Positions 27,601-42,600 of a stretch of DNA of 64,000 nt are shown here, in pieces. The DNA comes from Macrostomum lignano (taxonomy: Eukaryota). The stretch spans positions 1 to 64,000 of the forward strand of contig NIVC01000386.1 of assembly GCA_002269645.1 (NCBI GenBank), read 5' to 3'. The notes below the pieces were generated by a model that saw nothing but the letters and a program-made list of their open reading frames with translations, searched no databases and had not been told where the DNA came from. Every line of letters begins with the position of its first letter. Within the stretch, counting starts at the first letter, position 1. A program made the translations under genes and the position numbers.

Positions 27601-30600
27601 CGATGGGATTCGCTGTTCCGCTTCTCCTGCGTCTTAAATTGTAGCGGGTTTCCTAGAAAGTGTATTGAGCATTCCGCTTGTCTGGCAGCGGTTCTAAATA
27701 CCGGCAGGTTGCGTGGAGATTAAGTCCGGCCAGGGTTTATGGCGGCTTGGAATTTACACGAAGGCTTTAAGACTTTACTTTAAGATTGTGAAGCTTCGAG
27801 CTTGTGAAGCTTCGAGCTTGTGAAGCTTCGAGCTTGTGAAGCTTCGAGCTTGTGAAGCTTCGAGCTTGTGAAGCTTCGAGCTTGTGAAGCTTCGAGCTTG
27901 TGAAGCTTCGAGCTTGTGAAGAAGCTTCGAGCTTGTGAAGCTTCGAGCTTGTGGAAGTTCACCGGCTTTCATGATGTGAAATTTCGAGCTAGCGAAAGTG
28001 GAGTTGAATTTAATAACAACTCAAACTTTTAGTCTAAGTTTGAATGCCGAGTTAACTCTGAAAATGGCACCTTGAGTTTTTTACTCGAGCTCAGCTAAGC
28101 CAGGCGACTCTCGAATCTCGCAGACAGGTCGAGCAGCCATGCAATTTGCAACTCATTTCAGGCCAAGCTGCGCCTCCTTGAGCCGGGCTGCCGGGCCTGG
28201 CAACTCTGGCGGGACTTTTACTCTCGCATTTTATTTTCCTACTCTCAGCCGCCCAGCTCTCCTCTCCCTTCATCTCTCTGGGAGTTCTCCGGTGGGCAAT
28301 TCTGGGGATTAATTTTCGTCACATTGGGATCGGATTTGAGTGCCGGACCCCCACCCCCCCCCTGCTAATCAAATGCGCAATTCGATAGGGGGGCTCGAAG
28401 TGCCGGCTCGCGACTGTCATGGGACCTCCCTGGGGATCTGGGGGATGAAGGAATTCGGCCCTCCGCAGGCGGGGGCTGTTCGCTCGAATTCTGCCGCGGC
28501 CTGACAAATTGTTTACTCGGCATTGAACTTCTTGGCTTCTTCTAATGGCAGCTGAGCAGCTCGAGCCTCTTTTTCTGCTGGCTGCCGTCTCTGAGCCGCA
28601 TTTTGTCTGGCGCTCGCTCCCATATGCCTCCGATTATTTTGCTTTTAAAATATCACACGAGACTACTCATTAGCGATTCAGTAGTCAAGTTTGAACAGTT
28701 GTTTTTCCGTTGCCAAAAAAGAAGGTCATTCGCAATAGTTCTGTCACTCTGGAAGTCACTCATTTACACATTCACTGAGACAGACACATCAGGACTCTTG
28801 GTCACTCCGATTTCAGGTCACTATGAAAATCTGTCAATCACTCCCGGTTTGATCTTGGGGTCACTGACAGTCACACTCAGGGTCACTGGCGGTCACACTC
28901 GAGGCCACTCTGACAGTCACGATCATATTCACTCTGACAGTCACTGTCCGGGTCACTGACAGTCACTGTCATGGTCACTGACAGTCACACTGAGGGTCAC
29001 TGGCAGTCACACTGAGGGTCACTGGCAGTCACTGTCATGGTCACTGGCAGTCACTGTCATGGTCACTGGCAGTCACTGTCATGGTCACTGGCAGTCACTG
29101 TCATGGTCACTGGCAGTCACTGTCATGGTCACTGGCAGTCACTGTCATGGTCACTGGCAGTCACTGTCATGGTCACTGGCAGTCACTGTCATGGTCACTG
29201 ACAGTCACACTGAGGGTCACAGACAGTCACACTGAGGGTCACTGACAGTCACACTGAGGGTCACTGACAGTCACACTGAGGGTCACTGACAGTCACACTG
29301 AGGGTCACTCTGACAGTCACTGTCATGGTCACTGACAGTCACTGTCCGGGTCACTGTACAGTCACTCCTACGGTTACTCTGACAGTCGCTCGCAGCTAAC
29401 GGCAGCTATCCGCGCCCACCAAACCCGCAGAAGGACTTCGCCGCCGCGGTCAGCCGCCGCAACAGCAACCGCGGCCCGGCTGGCTGCGGCCATCACCGGC
29501 GCAGCATGGTGCTGGGTGCCGCTGCCGCCGCCGCCGCCACTGCCGCCGCTGCTGCCAATTCCTCGGCTTCGGCCACTTCGTCCGGCGGAGCCGCTGCTGT
29601 CGCCGCTGCTGCTGGAACGTCGCGGACTCACTCGCCGAAGAGGCTGACCGCCGCTGCTTCATCCTCTGCCGCAGCTGCCGCCGGGCCCGCCAATGCTGGT
29701 GAGTGGGGCTGGCAATCAGCTGGGCTAGCAATCCACTCTATGCCCTCATGTCCGTGTTGGCTAGGCTAGCAATCCATTCCATGCCCTCATGTCCGTGTTG
29801 GCTAGGCTAGCAATCCACTCTATGCCCTCATGTCCGTGTTGGCTAGGCTAGCAATCCATTCTATGCCCTCATGTCCGTGTTGGCTAGGCTAGCAATCCAC
29901 TCTATGCCCTCATGTCCGTGTTGGCTAGGCTAGCAATCCATTCCATGCCCTCATGTCCGTGTTGGCTAGGCTAGCAATCCATTCCATGCCCTCATGTCCG
30001 TGTTGGCTAGGCTAGCAATCCACTCTATGCCCTCATGTCCGTGTTGGCTAGGCTAGCAATCCACTCCATGCCCTCATGTCCGTGTTGGCTAGGCTAGCAA
30101 TCTATTCTATGCCCTCATGCCCGTGTTGGCTAGGCTAGCAATCCATTCCATGCCCTCATGTCCGTGTTGGCTAGGCTAGCAATCCACTCTATGCCCTCAT
30201 GCCCGTGTTGGCTAGGCTAGCAATCCATTCCATGCCCTCATGTCCGTGTTGGCTAGGCTAGCAATCCACTCCATGCCCTCATGTCCGTGTTGGCTAGGCT
30301 AGCAATCTATTCTATGCCCTCATGCCCGTGTTGGCTAGGCTAGCAATCCACTCTATGCCCTCATGTCCGTGTTGGCTAGGCTAGCAATCCACTCTATGCC
30401 CTCATGCCCGTGTTGGCTAGGCTAGCAATCCACTCTATGCCCTCATATCCGTGTTGACTAGGCTAGCAATCCACTCTATGCCCTCATATCCGTGTTGACT
30501 AGGCTAGCAATCCATTCCATGCCCTCATGTCCGTGTTGGCTAGGCTAGCAATCCATTCCATGCCCTCATGTCCGTGTTGGCTAGGCTAGCAATCCACTCT

Positions 30601-39600: not shown

Positions 39601-42600
39601 GCGCGCAGCTGTTGGCTTGCTGGTGGGCCGAGGCGAGGACCTCAAAATCAGATTGCTAGGAGAGGCGTCTGCGCGTATGAGCGAGGAGCACTTTTTGGGG
39701 AGGGGTATGAGAGCAGAGCTGGGAGAGGCAAGGCGACGGGGGAGCGATGTATTATTGAAAAAAACGGCCGTCTCCAGTTTCCCAGCCTGCAGCCTCATCT
39801 GTCTCAATACGCAAAGCACTGCCCCTGCGTCCTGCCGCCTACCCTAGCTTTGCTTTGGCCATTAGCCATCCAGGCATCCCAGCTTAGTGCCCTGGCAGCC
39901 ATGCCGGGCAACAACAGACATCTTGCTCCGCCCGTCCAGCATCATCAGCTTCATCATCGCGGCCGTCAACATCATCAACACTGCCAGCATCAGCAGCAGG
40001 CGCCTAAGAGCCGCTCTTTATTGAATATCAATGTTTCATTGCGATCCTCTTTGTCAAGAGAGTTCCTGGCTCGCAGCAGTGAGTTGAGATTAGGTTACTG
40101 GCACTCGAGTGCTCAATAACCAACTGAACAATGGCTTGAAATATTTTCCTGATTCCGCATTCTAAATATTCTACCACGAAATCATATCATACTGCAAGTC
40201 CTACATCCCAAATCCCAGCCAACTCTCATAGACAAAATCTCTGCTCCCAAATCCTACCTCCAGCATCAAAGCTGCCTCATCAATTGCAATCAGCATCTCC
40301 ACCCCCGCACCCTTCTCCCCAACAGGCAGCCCGGTGGACAGTCCCCGCGGCAGTCCTTCCATCCACTACCTGCCCGCTCACCTGCGCGCCGAGAGTCGCA
40401 AGCCGGACGTCCGCCGCTGGTCCCTGGCCTCGCTGCCCTCCTCGGGCTACGGCACCAACACACCGGAGAGCAGCAACGTCTCCAGCCAGTGCTCGTCCAA
40501 GGAGAACCTCAACCCGCACCACCACCACCATCACCACCACCATCACCATCACCCGCCAGCGTCCAGCCAGCCGCAAGCCACTGTGCCCCATCGTGTACAG
40601 CAGCAGCAGCAGCAACAGCAACAACAACAGCAGCAGCAGCAACAGCAGCACAGCAGCACGGACTCGAACCCGGGTCTGGAGGAAGCGCCCGAACGGCACT
40701 CGCCATTCAGGCCGAGATCTCGCAGCTTGAGCAGCCCAGCTCGGTCACCTGGGCCCGATCAGGTGAGCTGTGGGAACTCGCTACTGTGGGTACAAAGTGG
40801 ATCTGTACGATCCCAGTTTAGCTTTCAGTTGTTTCGCATTTAAAATATTGCTTCAAATTTTCTTTTAAGCAAGAAAACCCTTTCTATGAAATCTCGAATT
40901 CCCGAACGCTTTAAAAATCCCCTTTATAGGATATCACAAAATCTAGAAAAGATCCCTTTTCCAAGAAACGCCGAAGCTACAAAAGAATTCAGTGCTTCCC
41001 CGCCACCCGCCGCGGCCCGCAGGACCTGTTGCTGATGAACAGCGTGTACAAGGACCGGTTCCCAAACGCCACGGCGCAAATGGAGGAACGCCTGAGGTCC
41101 TTTCTGGCCAGCCTGGAGTCGCAGAAGAACGAGGAGCGGAACGCCATCGCCAGGTACTCGCTGCTGCAGATCCAGGAGCTCACCAGGGAGTGCCTGCAGC
41201 GCTCGCAGGACAAGCAGCTGTCTAGCGCGTTCTTCTTCGACATCAGCCAGAAGGTGGAGCTGCTGGCCAAGGAGTGCGAGGACAAGAGCAGGGAGGCCCT
41301 GCCGCGCGTCATCGACTGGGGCCGCCGGCTGCTCATCATCGTCTCCAGGACCGCCCGCCTGCTCGAGTGCCTCGAGTTCGACCCCGCCGAGTTCCTGCAG
41401 CTGCTCGAGGCTGCCGAGGGACAGGTGCGACCTGCGCCTGGCTGCTGCCCCAGCCCTGATGCTTCAACTGGCTCCTGCTGCCCCACCCCTGATGCTTCAG
41501 CTGGCTGCTGCTGCCCCACCCCTGATGCTTCAACTGGCTCCTGCTGCCCCACCCCTGATGCTTCAGCTGGCTGCTGCTGCCCCACCCCTGATGCTTCAGC
41601 TGGCTGCTGCTGCCCCACCCCTGATGCTTCAGCTGGCTGCCCCACCCCTGACGCTTCAGCTGACTGCTGCTGCCCCAGCCCTGATGCTTCAGCTGCCTGC
41701 TGCTGCCCCTGATGCTTCAGCTGCCTGCCTCACCCCTGATGCTTCAGCTGGCTGCTGCCGCCCTGACTCAGCAAAGCCCCCCTCTTTATTCTCCAGGTGC
41801 GGCAGGTGGAGAAGCTGCAGACGGACATTCCCCGCTACATCATCTCCAAGCTGGGCCTCAACAAAGACCCTCTGGACGATCTGGTGGACATCGAGACTCC
41901 GGCTGCTACCGCCGCTGCATCCTCGGCCGCCGCCGCTGCCGGTGCCGCCCAGTCGACCTCTTCTGCCGCTGCCTCGGAGACTTCGTCAACCTCTGCCTCG
42001 GCCGCCACATCCGAGGCCGGCGGCAAGGCGGCGGCCATCTTCCACGAGCCCTGCGAGGAGGACTTCCAGGTGGTGAAGCTAATTTCTAACGGGGCCTACG
42101 GTGCTGTGCACCTGGTTCGCCACCGGGCCAGCAAGCAGCGCTTCGCGATGAAGAAGGTCAAGAAAACTCACCTGGTGCTGCGCAATCAGGTGGACCAGGC
42201 GTTCGCCGAGCGGGACATCCTGTCATTCGCTGACAACCCCTTCGTGGTGTCCCTGTTCTGCACCTTCGAGACAAAGAAGTACCTCTGCATGGTGATGGAG
42301 TTCGTAGAGGGCGGCGACTGCGCCTCTCTGCTCAAGCAGATTGTGGTGAGTGGCCTCTCAGTAGCTTGATTGGTTGACAGCTTGATCAGTAGCTTGATTG
42401 ATTGACAGCTTGATCAGCAGCTTGATTGATTGACAGCTTGATCAGTAGCTTGATTGATTGACAGCTTGATCAGTAGCTTTATTGATTGACAGCTTGATCA
42501 GTAGCTTGATTGATTGACAGCTTGATCAGTAGCTTTATTGATTGACAGCTTGATCAGTAGCTTTATTGATTGACAGCTTGATCAGCAGCTTGATTGATTG

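What the first reader, a model, noticed from the sequence alone, without database searches (positions are those of the whole stretch)
29699..40325. Three complete genes nested in one MAST kinase intron
Seen: exon 29431-29698 (phase 1) splices in frame to 40326 to rebuild the MAST G-SP(V)DSPR junction, and the SNLVRMR exon lies at 15983. The intervening 10.6 kb contains TMEM237 (-), MICU-A (+) and MICU-B (-). MICU-A is on the host strand, so its poly(A) site must be bypassed by long MAST transcripts. Triple nesting, including a same-strand gene, is uncommon. Naive annotation would split MAST and start it at ~40 kb.
Basis: partly seen in the sequence, partly recalled or inferred. Interest (0 to 1): 0.7.

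Follow-up and report, generated by a model that had tools for sequence, protein, structure and literature searches.

The report
Three genes inside a MAST intron
In the flatworm Macrostomum lignano, one 10.6-kb intron of a MAST kinase gene does hold three other complete genes; this kind of gene nesting is well known, and the main practical result is that the public MAST gene model is shown to be cut short.

Summary
The window is bases 1-64000 of M. lignano contig NIVC01000386.1. Exon B (29431-29698, ends in phase 1) and exon C (from 40326) have canonical splice sites and join in frame to give G-SPVDSPR. The SNLVRMR exon is at 15983-16059. TMEM237 (-), MICU-A (+) and MICU-B (-) lie wholly between B and C.

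I found no RNA-derived sequence, so the splice is inferred. The support is strong:
- The spliced N-terminus is collinear with MASTs of other animals.
- The introns flanking exon B sit at the same positions and phases in a mollusc and a spider.
- Exon C has no Met and starts in mid-codon.
- Exon B is identical in a second assembly contig of the same locus, while its flanks differ.
- A paralogous M. lignano MAST has a MICU-B paralog, on the opposite strand, in the same intron.

I extended the model upstream to an ATG at 12260, giving 11 exons and about 1535 aa.

Nested genes, multiple nesting and same-strand nesting are all well documented. This is a new member of a known kind. Its value is a corrected annotation and a nesting that predates a gene duplication.

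The parts
12260..12445 (+). MAST exon 1 (proposed). ATG at 12260 with an in-frame TGA two codons upstream. Reads MDSPIAEDDDYVFASSRSS...; donor CATCCG|gtaatt, phase 0.
   Evidence: It matches the N-terminus MDSPMAEDYDQVFMSSQSS of the M. lignano paralog A0A1I8GP98. The tblastn match ends exactly at 12445. The match is weak (E = 0.012) and the splice is inferred.
14957..15097 (+). MAST exon 2 (proposed, least certain). Reads EEPLSRNG...GLFRRRVSDPVPAAA...; donor GCAGCG|gtaaat, phase 0.
   Evidence: It is an open frame with splice sites whose phases fit exons 1 and 3. The similarity to homologs is only at motif level. The acceptor could be 14957, 14960 or 14963.
15403..15616 (+). MAST exon 3. Acceptor ccgcag|TCGGAC (phase 0); donor TGCAGC|gtgagt (phase 1). 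Contains [13 protein letters not shown].
   Evidence: tblastn to the paralog gives E = 4e-5. The junction with exon A reproduces the paralog's ..QHS(A/S)TSNLVR.
15983..16059 (+). MAST exon A: [25 protein letters not shown]. It ends in phase 0.
   Evidence: E = 4.8e-6 against a horseshoe-crab MAST. The donor is at the same position and phase as in the spider.
16060..29430 (+). Intron A-B, 13,371 nt. It consists mostly of minisatellites and (GTCT)n/(CTGT)n arrays. No gene was detected.
   Evidence: tandem repeats. One search found no Pfam hits in its long ORFs.
29431..29698 (+). MAST exon B: [21 protein letters not shown]..(Ala-rich)..[14 protein letters not shown](G). It starts in phase 0 and ends in phase 1.
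   Evidence: The motif pattern is unique in the window. There are 0 differences in 268 nt against the second copy L001, compared with 1.3-6% in the flanks. Both boundaries match Elysia.
29699..40325 (+). Intron B-C, 10,627 nt: the host intron. A 41-bp x 28 minisatellite lies at 29719-30876. The three nested genes take up about 4.4 kb of it.
   Evidence: Contig L001 shows the same order: exon B, TMEM237, MICU-A, MICU-B, exon C.
31189..32852 (-). Nested gene 1: TMEM237 homolog, 494 aa in GenBank. It has at least one short intron, with its donor at 32051.
   Evidence: Pfam PF15383, E = 1.7e-23. The exact intron set is unresolved.
34662..36086 (+). Nested gene 2: MICU-A, 474 aa, single exon, on the same strand as MAST. 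It has two EF-hand pairs.
   Evidence: It is identical to a protein on NIVC01003489.1 and 99% identical to PAA59250.1. It is not annotated on this contig.
36577..37902 (-). Nested gene 3: MICU-B, single exon, convergent with MICU-A. Candidate ATGs are at 37902, 37809 and 37758. GenBank gives a partial CDS, 36577-37893.
   Evidence: It is 37% identical to MICU-A and 41% to primate MICU3.
36421..36429 (.). TTTATTAAA: an AATAAA on the minus strand (MICU-B) overlapping an ATTAAA on the plus strand (MICU-A). These are the likely 3'-end signals of the convergent pair. A long MAST transcript must read through the plus-strand one.
   Evidence: This is a hexamer match only; usage is not shown.
40326..40762 (+). 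MAST exon C: (G)[35 protein letters not shown]. It covers the first 114 positions of DUF1908, contains no Met and starts in phase 1.
41023..41424 (+). MAST exon D (DUF1908, middle part). The GenBank CDS starts at its Met, 41035.
41797..42345 (+). MAST exon E (end of DUF1908, start of the kinase domain).
42851..43306 (+). MAST exon F (kinase catalytic core).
43793..44586 (+). MAST exon G (end of the kinase domain, AGC tail, Pro-rich linker). It ends in phase 2.
46245..47328 (+). MAST exon H (PDZ domain and low-complexity tail). The stop codon TGA is at 47326-47328.
   Evidence: The end of the GenBank CDS agrees.

Best explanation
The window holds one MAST (microtubule-associated Ser/Thr kinase) gene of about 35 kb, 12260-47328 on the + strand. 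I model it as 11 exons encoding about 1535 aa.

The conserved N-terminal region is split by two very long introns, A-B (13.4 kb) and B-C (10.6 kb). The B-C intron is an ancient MAST intron and encloses three independent protein-coding genes:
- TMEM237 (-)
- MICU-A (+)
- MICU-B (-)

Inferred mechanism: RNA polymerase II starts upstream of 12260, transcribes through the whole nest, and the spliceosome joins 29698 to 40326. The three inner genes are most likely transcribed from their own promoters. TMEM237 and MICU-A are head to head, 1.8 kb apart. MICU-A and MICU-B are tail to tail and probably end at overlapping poly(A) hexamers near 36.42 kb. The host transcript must ignore the plus-strand ATTAAA there.

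Shown: the sequence, frames and splice signals; the homology; the conserved intron positions; the same architecture at the paralogous locus; and the truncated public model. Inferred: the actual splice, the promoters and the 3' ends.
For: 1. All 10 proposed introns are GT-AG and their phases fit one open frame.

2. The spliced A+B+C+D protein aligns collinearly with MASTs of spider, beetle, horseshoe crab, fish and mammal. The matching blocks are SNLVRMR..GQSAPxLS, then KDx..RRxS..R[KR]Sxx..HSP, then SPx[22 protein letters not shown].

3. Intron positions are conserved. In Elysia chlorotica the exon-B equivalent is bounded by 'ccgcag|AAG GAA' (phase 0, at the Lys of KE..) and 'CAA G|gtgagc ... 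tttcag|GC TCA CCA'. That is the same split Gly codon before SPxESPR, and the intron there is 29.8 kb. The spider Stegodyphus has a phase-0 intron after SAPSLSASM and a phase-1 intron one residue before APVD.

4. Exon C encodes DUF1908 positions 1-114 (E = 5.7e-20). It has no Met, and there is no Met upstream in its ORF. It starts with two bases of a codon, so it needs an upstream phase-1 exon. Exon A ends in phase 0, so an exon of length 3n+1 is required between them; exon B is 268 nt.

5. Exon B shows 0 differences in 268 nt against contig NIVC01002284.1. The flanks differ by 6.0% upstream and 1.3% downstream.

6. That contig shows the same order (exon B, TMEM237, MICU-A, MICU-B, exon C), so the arrangement is not a misassembly.

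7. The paralogous MAST-2 locus (L004) has the same phase-1 intron, 'CTA G|gtgaga ... ttgcag|GC AGC CCT' giving G-SPTRTSG. A MICU-B paralog (58.6% identity) lies on the opposite strand inside it. GenBank (a 1378-aa gene) and UniProt A0A1I8-series models already span it.

8. A related Macrostomum gives an mRNA-sized contig for the MICU-A ortholog. It has at least 179 nt of 5' sequence and no spliced leader, which fits an own promoter.
Against: No transcript-derived sequence crossing 29698^40326 or 16059^29431 was found. Two word-index searches and one exhaustive HMMER search returned no M. lignano protein containing this locus's exons A-C.

The transcriptome-guided GenBank model starts inside exon D. 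This could mean that the dominant RNA starts near 41 kb.

Exon B alone is not significant against a profile HMM. The motif pattern used was partly shaped after I had seen exon B: I allowed Met in R[KR]S[FLM].

Exons 1 and 2 rest on weak similarity.

I do not know whether the related species' contigs (SRR28338163/5) are RNA or DNA.
Confidence: 0.85

Rival explanations
1. There are two loci. Exons 1-B would be a truncated 5' remnant, or a separate short gene, and the working MAST would start downstream at about 40-41 kb, as in GenBank. TMEM237 and the two MICU genes would then be ordinary intergenic neighbours, not nested genes.
For: The GenBank CDS starts at 41035. I found no RNA evidence for the B-C junction.
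Against: Exon C is intact and conserved: 2 differences in 437 nt between copies. It carries the most conserved MAST N-terminal motif, yet it has no start codon and begins in mid-codon. An SL-donated ATG at 40326 would read a different frame (frame 0). Exon B is under constraint. The same exon order with the same intron exists in the paralog, in a mollusc and in a spider. A protein starting at 41035 would lack DUF1908 positions 1-117.
Confidence: 0.06
2. Both forms exist. A long isoform starts at 12.26 kb and spans the nest. A short isoform starts from an internal promoter in or near intron C-D and lacks the N-terminal region. The GenBank model would reflect the more abundant short form.
For: The GenBank models on two contigs (1090 and 1122 aa) both start at the exon D Met. 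Alternative promoters are common in MAST genes of other animals; many isoforms are listed.
Against: Nothing direct. A UniProt model that runs from intron C-D into exon D (A0A1I8IVQ0) is a genome-based prediction containing frameshifts, not a transcript. ORF callers also pick the first Met when the 5' exons are missing from a fragmented transcript assembly.
Confidence: 0.3
3. Assembly artefact. The 5' MAST exons and the nest would have been joined to the MAST body by a misassembly in this repeat-rich, polyploid genome.
For: Every intron here carries long tandem repeats. The genome is known to be highly duplicated (PMC10468722 abstract).
Against: A second contig (NIVC01002284.1) is collinear from 24.0 to 44.8 kb, across exon B, all three genes and exon C, at about 97.5% identity. 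A third (NIVC01003489.1) covers exon B through MICU-B at 99.7%. The paralogous locus has the same layout.
Confidence: 0.02
4. MICU-A, which is on the host strand, has no promoter of its own. It would be cut out of the MAST pre-mRNA by SL trans-splicing and polyadenylation, like a downstream operon gene placed inside an intron.
For: [quoted passage not shown] MICU-A is on the host strand and several AG sites precede its ATG.
Against: The ortholog contig from a related species carries at least 179 nt upstream of the ATG, collinear with the genome, and no SL. The distances (exon B to MICU-A 5.0 kb; MICU-A to exon C 4.2 kb) far exceed the 1-kb operon criterion used for this species. TMEM237 lies head to head 1.8 kb away, which suits a shared bidirectional promoter.
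Confidence: 0.07

Closest known systems
Nested (intronic) protein-coding genes of metazoans. Examples are the human and Drosophila sets reviewed in PMC3192792. From my own knowledge, the classic triple nest is EVI2A, EVI2B and OMG in one intron of human NF1.
   Same: Complete, independently transcribed genes lie wholly inside one long intron of a host gene. Most are on the opposite strand (here 2 of 3) and many are single-exon (here 2 of 3). Several genes can share one host intron.
   Different: One of the three is on the host strand, the minority class (about a third in human). The species is a flatworm, for which I found no paper mentioning nested genes. Here the host's public gene model is truncated because of the nest.
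The paralogous M. lignano locus: MAST-2 (UniProt A0A1I8GP98 and relatives) with the MICU-B paralog BOX15_Mlig018762g2, on NIVC01004290.1.
   Same: It has the same phase-1 intron before G-SP. A MICU-B-type gene lies on the opposite strand inside it. The same 5' exon series is present (MDSP.., RGLxLxHRT, SNLVR.., RRNSNR).
   Different: The intron is only about 3.4 kb and holds one nested gene. No TMEM237 or MICU-A is seen within the 21 kb viewed. MAST-2 lacks the introns at the D-E, E-F and F-G positions. The public models there already span the nest.
SL trans-spliced operons of M. lignano (PMC8629364).
   Same: Genes on the same strand are transcribed within one long primary transcript. The host pre-mRNA necessarily contains the MICU-A sequence.
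   Different: The distances are 4-5 kb rather than under 1 kb. I found no SL evidence. The flanking 'genes' are exons of a single gene, so this is nesting, not an operon.

Membership tests
MAST kinase family | DUF1908 (pre-kinase) domain immediately N-terminal to the kinase domain | tested here: met
   PF08926 matches exons C (E = 5.7e-20, positions 1-114), D (E = 4e-45, positions 118-256) and E (positions 253-281).
MAST kinase family | AGC-type Ser/Thr kinase domain followed by a PDZ domain | tested here: met
   Pkinase matches exons E and F (E = 1e-14 and 3e-35). PDZ and PDZ_6 match exon H. Identity to animal MASTs is 52-57% over the core.
MAST kinase family | Conserved N-terminal motif series SNLxRMR..GQSAPSL / RRxS..RKSxI..HSP / SPx[22 protein letters not shown], in that order | tested here: met
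   The alignment shows the series split over exons A, B and C in the right order. tblastn results are and the motif test.
Nested intronic gene arrangement | The inner genes lie entirely between two exons of the host and share no exon with it | tested here: met
   The inner CDS spans are 31189-32852, 34662-36086 and 36577-37902. All lie inside 29699-40325.
Nested intronic gene arrangement | The flanking host exons are joined in a mature mRNA | not testable with these tools
   No RNA data are held for this locus. The join is inferred from frame, splice signals, conserved intron positions and the models of the paralog.
Nested intronic gene arrangement | The inner genes are intact and independently functional, not pseudogenes | tested here: met
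   All three have full open frames and Pfam domains. Divergence between assembly copies is low: 0.4-1.3% in the genes against 3.9-5.5% in the spacers. MICU-A has an ortholog at 68% identity in another species, and the MICU-B paralog has one at 86%. Expression was not tested here.
MICU (mitochondrial calcium uptake) family | Homology to MICU1-3 across the whole protein, with two EF-hand pairs | tested here: met
   MICU-A is 33% identical to MICU3 over 81% of its length (E about 1e-43), with two EF-hand regions. MICU-B is 41% identical to MICU3, but Pfam detects only the C-terminal EF-hand. Mitochondrial targeting and function were not tested.
TMEM237 (ciliary transition-zone protein) | Match to the PF15383 profile above its curated cut-off | tested here: met
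   83.6 bits against a cut-off of 28.1, profile positions 68-245 of 247.
SL trans-spliced operon (M. lignano criteria, PMC8629364) | Same-strand genes less than 1 kb apart after subtracting repeats, with the downstream gene SL trans-spliced | tested here: not met
   The gaps are 5.0 and 4.2 kb. There is no SL in the window or in the orthologous contigs.

The most novel reading that the evidence does not exclude
The MAST/MICU-B nest is an old, duplicated unit. It may be kept because host read-through and antisense or sense transcription of the inner genes regulate each other (transcriptional interference or co-regulation). In the MAST-1 copy the intron later became a 'gene harbour', taking in TMEM237 and a same-strand MICU-A. 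Use of MICU-A's poly(A) site would then compete with production of full-length MAST. In that case the choice between N-terminally complete and truncated MAST would be set by activity of the nested genes.
Probability: 0.1. Interest if true: 0.5.

Novelty: new member of a known kind. Interest (0 to 1): 0.3.

Why it matters
There are three practical points.

1. Annotation. The GenBank models of this MAST on two contigs lack about 445 N-terminal residues. The missing part includes half of the DUF1908 domain and the conserved SNLVRMR and [18 protein letters not shown] motifs. MICU-A is not annotated on this contig at all. Anyone using M. lignano MAST or MICU genes for knock-down, in situ probes or phylogeny would be working from wrong models.

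2. Evolution. The host and nested pair (MAST plus MICU-B) was duplicated as a unit, so the nesting is older than the MAST-1/MAST-2 split. It sits in an intron whose position is shared with molluscs and spiders. This gives a dated example of how stable nesting can be.

3. Mechanism. The same-strand MICU-A gives a simple system, in a transgenic-capable flatworm, for asking how a host transcript ignores an internal poly(A) site.

None of this is surprising to a specialist.

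Tried and rejected
- A profile HMM of the exon-B-equivalent segment of 10 foreign MASTs, run against all ORF fragments of the window, placed exon B about 31st with E = 7.9. The segment is too short and is interrupted by alanine runs, so I replaced this test with an ordered-motif test.

- I searched for transcript-derived proteins crossing the junctions. The word-index searches and the exhaustive search returned no protein of this locus with exons A-C. The GenBank MAST proteins of M. lignano were not returned either. The exact look-up of my 1090-aa short model also failed, although its length equals the GenBank call. 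A small difference in one splice choice may therefore exist.

- I first read P0142 (219 aa) as a possible transcript starting in intron C-D. I rejected this because it is a UniProt genome-based prediction containing frameshifts.

- The exact TMEM237 exon structure remains open. Thirteen two-intron solutions give 494 aa, and two of them were tested by exact look-up without a match.

- I searched for the spliced leader in the window and in the contigs L005-L007 and found none.

- An SL-donated ATG at the exon A or exon C acceptors gives the wrong frame.

- Pfam scans of the long GC-rich ORFs in intron A-B and in the spacers of intron B-C found nothing.

- Gene-structure look-ups for Dendroctonus and Lingula MASTs were not on record.

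Full report
IDENTITY OF THE WINDOW
The MICU-A ORF (34662-36086) is 100% identical to a Macrostomum lignano protein on NIVC01003489.1. It is 99% identical to PAA59250.1 (BOX15_Mlig005307g1) on NIVC01002284.1. Looking up a third copy of MICU-B returned a locus (L003) that is 100% identical to window 26577-47893. Its record coordinates are the same numbers. The window is therefore bases 1-64000 of NIVC01000386.1 in assembly GCA_002269645.1 (Mlig_3_7).

THE OBSERVATION
- Exon A (15983-16059) reads [25 protein letters not shown] between 'ccag|' and '|gtgagt' and ends in phase 0.
- Exon B (29431-29698) runs from 'cgcag|AAG GAC' to 'GCT G|gtgagt'. It is 268 nt and ends in phase 1.
- Exon C begins 'aacag|GC AGC CCG GTG GAC AGT CCC CGC' at 40326.
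- The concatenation reads ...[15 protein letters not shown]... in one open frame.

Between B and C lie three genes:
- TMEM237 (31189-32852, -; PF15383, E = 1.7e-23)
- MICU-A (34662-36086, +)
- MICU-B (36577-37902, -)

All coordinates in the finding are correct.

DO EXONS A, B AND C BELONG TO THE MAST GENE?
I found no RNA-derived sequence for this locus. The argument is therefore comparative, and it has six parts.

1. Collinearity. The spliced A-B-C-D protein aligns end to end with MASTs of a spider, beetles, a horseshoe crab, fish and mammals. Each exon carries its own conserved block in the right order. Exon A is the only place in the window that matches that block (tblastn E down to 4.8e-6).

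2. Exon B on its own. It is short and interrupted by alanine runs, and a profile HMM does not single it out (E = 7.9). An ordered motif pattern that fits 12 of 13 foreign MASTs occurs exactly once in the six-frame translation, starting at the first codon after the predicted acceptor. It occurs in none of 200 simulated windows. I widened one position of that pattern after seeing exon B, so this test is supportive, not decisive.

3. Need for an upstream exon. Exon C encodes DUF1908 positions 1-114. It contains no Met and has none upstream in its ORF, and it starts in mid-codon. Exon A ends on a full codon, so an intervening exon of length 3n+1 is required. Exon B is 268 nt.

4. Constraint. Against the second assembly copy (L001, about 97.5% identical overall), exon B has 0 differences in 268 nt. 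The 2.4 kb upstream differs by 6.0% and the intron downstream by 1.3%.

5. Conserved intron positions. In the mollusc Elysia chlorotica the equivalent exon starts 'ccgcag|AAG GAA' (Lys of KE.., phase 0). It ends 'CAA G|gtgagc', and the next exon begins 'tttcag|GC TCA CCA', giving G-SPHESPR. The same Gly codon is split at the same base, and the intron there is 29.8 kb long. The spider Stegodyphus has a phase-0 intron after SAPSLSASM and a phase-1 intron one residue before APVD. The B-C intron is thus an old MAST intron that tends to be long.

6. The paralog. M. lignano has a second MAST (UniProt A0A1I8GP98 and relatives, about 75% identical). On NIVC01004290.1 (L004) it has equivalents of exon 3, exon A, exon B (RVRRNSNR...QQAPAQL, donor 'CTA G|gtgaga') and exon C ('ttgcag|GC AGC CCT', G-SPTRTSG). 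Between the last two, on the opposite strand, lies BOX15_Mlig018762g2, a protein 58.6% identical to MICU-B. GenBank calls a 1378-aa gene across it, and UniProt models join B to C there.

Host and nested gene were therefore duplicated together. The architecture proposed for the window already exists in public models of its paralog.

THE FULL GENE MODEL
The paralog's N-terminus led to three more 5' exons in the window:
- Exon 1, 12260-12445. The ATG has a stop two codons upstream. It reads MDSPIAEDDDYVFASSRSS, against MDSPMAEDYDQVFMSSQSS in the paralog.
- Exon 2, 14957-15097. This is the weakest exon.
- Exon 3, 15403-15616. Its 'gtgagt' donor in phase 1 fits exon A and reproduces the paralog's QHS(A/S)TSNLVR across the junction.

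Downstream exons are D 41023-41424, E 41797-42345, F 42851-43306, G 43793-44586 and H 46245-47328.

All ten introns are GT-AG with matching phases. The CDS is 4608 nt.

IS IT A MISASSEMBLY?
No. NIVC01002284.1 is collinear from about 24.0 to 44.8 kb, across exon B, the three genes and exon C. NIVC01003489.1 covers exon B through MICU-B at 99.7% identity.

HOW IT LIKELY WORKS
The steps below are inferred.
- The host is transcribed from upstream of 12260 through both long introns.
- The inner genes probably have their own promoters. TMEM237 and MICU-A are divergent and 1.8 kb apart.
- MICU-A and MICU-B converge. The sequence TTTATTAAA at 36421-36429 gives an AATAAA for the minus strand overlapping an ATTAAA for the plus strand.
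- The MICU-A ortholog of a related species sits on an mRNA-sized contig. It has at least 179 nt of 5' sequence collinear with the genome and no spliced leader. The distances to the host exons (4-5 kb) exceed the 1-kb operon criterion for this species (PMC8629364). I therefore rate an operon-like origin of MICU-A from the host pre-mRNA as unlikely.
- A short MAST isoform from an internal promoter near 41 kb cannot be excluded. It would not affect the nesting.

COMPARISON WITH WHAT IS KNOWN
Nested genes are common in animals. [quoted passage not shown] It also cites 752 nested genes in the fly. In its own survey of mostly non-coding nested genes, 23 of 74 host genes held two or three. Two opposite-strand genes and one same-strand gene in one intron fit that picture. 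I found no paper that mentions nested genes in M. lignano.

This is a new member of a known kind. It gives a useful correction to the annotation and a dated example of a nest that predates a gene duplication.

SIDE OBSERVATION
MAST-2 has no introns at the window's D-E, E-F and F-G positions; one tblastn match runs through them. The spider and the mollusc have no intron at EAAEGQ|V, and the mollusc's nearest intron to E-F is several residues away. In the window each of these three introns is mostly a minisatellite (33-, 28- and 21-bp units) and sits before a GTG codon. CAGGTGCG occurs at both ends of intron D-E. These may be recently gained introns. I did not pursue this further.

Noticed in passing
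window 41425-41796, 42346-42850, 43307-43792 (MAST introns D-E, E-F, F-G); L004 8394-6904: These three introns are absent from the M. lignano paralog MAST-2, where a single uninterrupted tblastn match runs through all three positions. The D-E position is intron-free in spider and mollusc, and the mollusc's nearest intron to E-F is several residues away. Each intron is mostly a minisatellite (33-, 28- and 21-bp units) and lies before a GTG codon. CAGGTGCG is present at both ends of D-E. The alternatives are recent intron gain in MAST-1 or joint loss of adjacent introns in MAST-2.
   Followed up: partly
window 34546-34568; L005 about 55-77: A 23-nt block, GCTAATATTTGACCAAGAGGTGT, lies 93 nt upstream of the MICU-A ATG. 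It is identical in a related Macrostomum (68% protein identity), while the rest of the 5' region has diverged. It is a candidate promoter or 5'-UTR element.
   Followed up: partly
window 36421-36429: The convergent MICU-A and MICU-B genes share an overlapping pair of poly(A) hexamers, TTTATTAAA. It reads ATTAAA on the plus strand and AATAAA on the minus strand.
   Followed up: no
window 34662-36086: MICU-A has an intact 474-aa ORF here, but no gene is called for it on this contig in the public annotation. The same gene is called on two other contigs of the assembly.
   Followed up: yes
window 16110-18170, 29719-30876, 19087-19466, 23143-23735, 44696-45169: Long tandem arrays start within 20-50 nt of the donors of exons A and B: 27 bp x 76 after exon A and 41 bp x 28 after exon B. 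Several (GTCT)n/(CTGT)n arrays of 380-590 bp lie in the introns. They produce the many long spurious ORFs (DRQT.., CLSV..).
   Followed up: partly
window 16060-29430 (+ strand): The 13.4-kb A-B intron has no AATAAA and only one ATTAAA on the host strand. About 3 of each would be expected at even base composition. This may reflect avoidance of premature polyadenylation, or simply the repeat and GC content.
   Followed up: no
window 51122-51445 (-) and about 55571-56673 (+): Downstream of MAST there is an intronless histone H4 gene. There is also a Peptidase_C13 gene, resembling the GPI-anchor transamidase PIGK or a legumain, in at least two exons.
   Followed up: partly
L004 (NIVC01004290.1) 10001-11296 and 4470-21296: The paralogous MAST-2 intron holds only the MICU-B paralog. 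No TMEM237 or MICU-A is seen in the 21 kb viewed. Those two genes either entered the MAST-1 intron later or were lost from MAST-2.
   Followed up: partly
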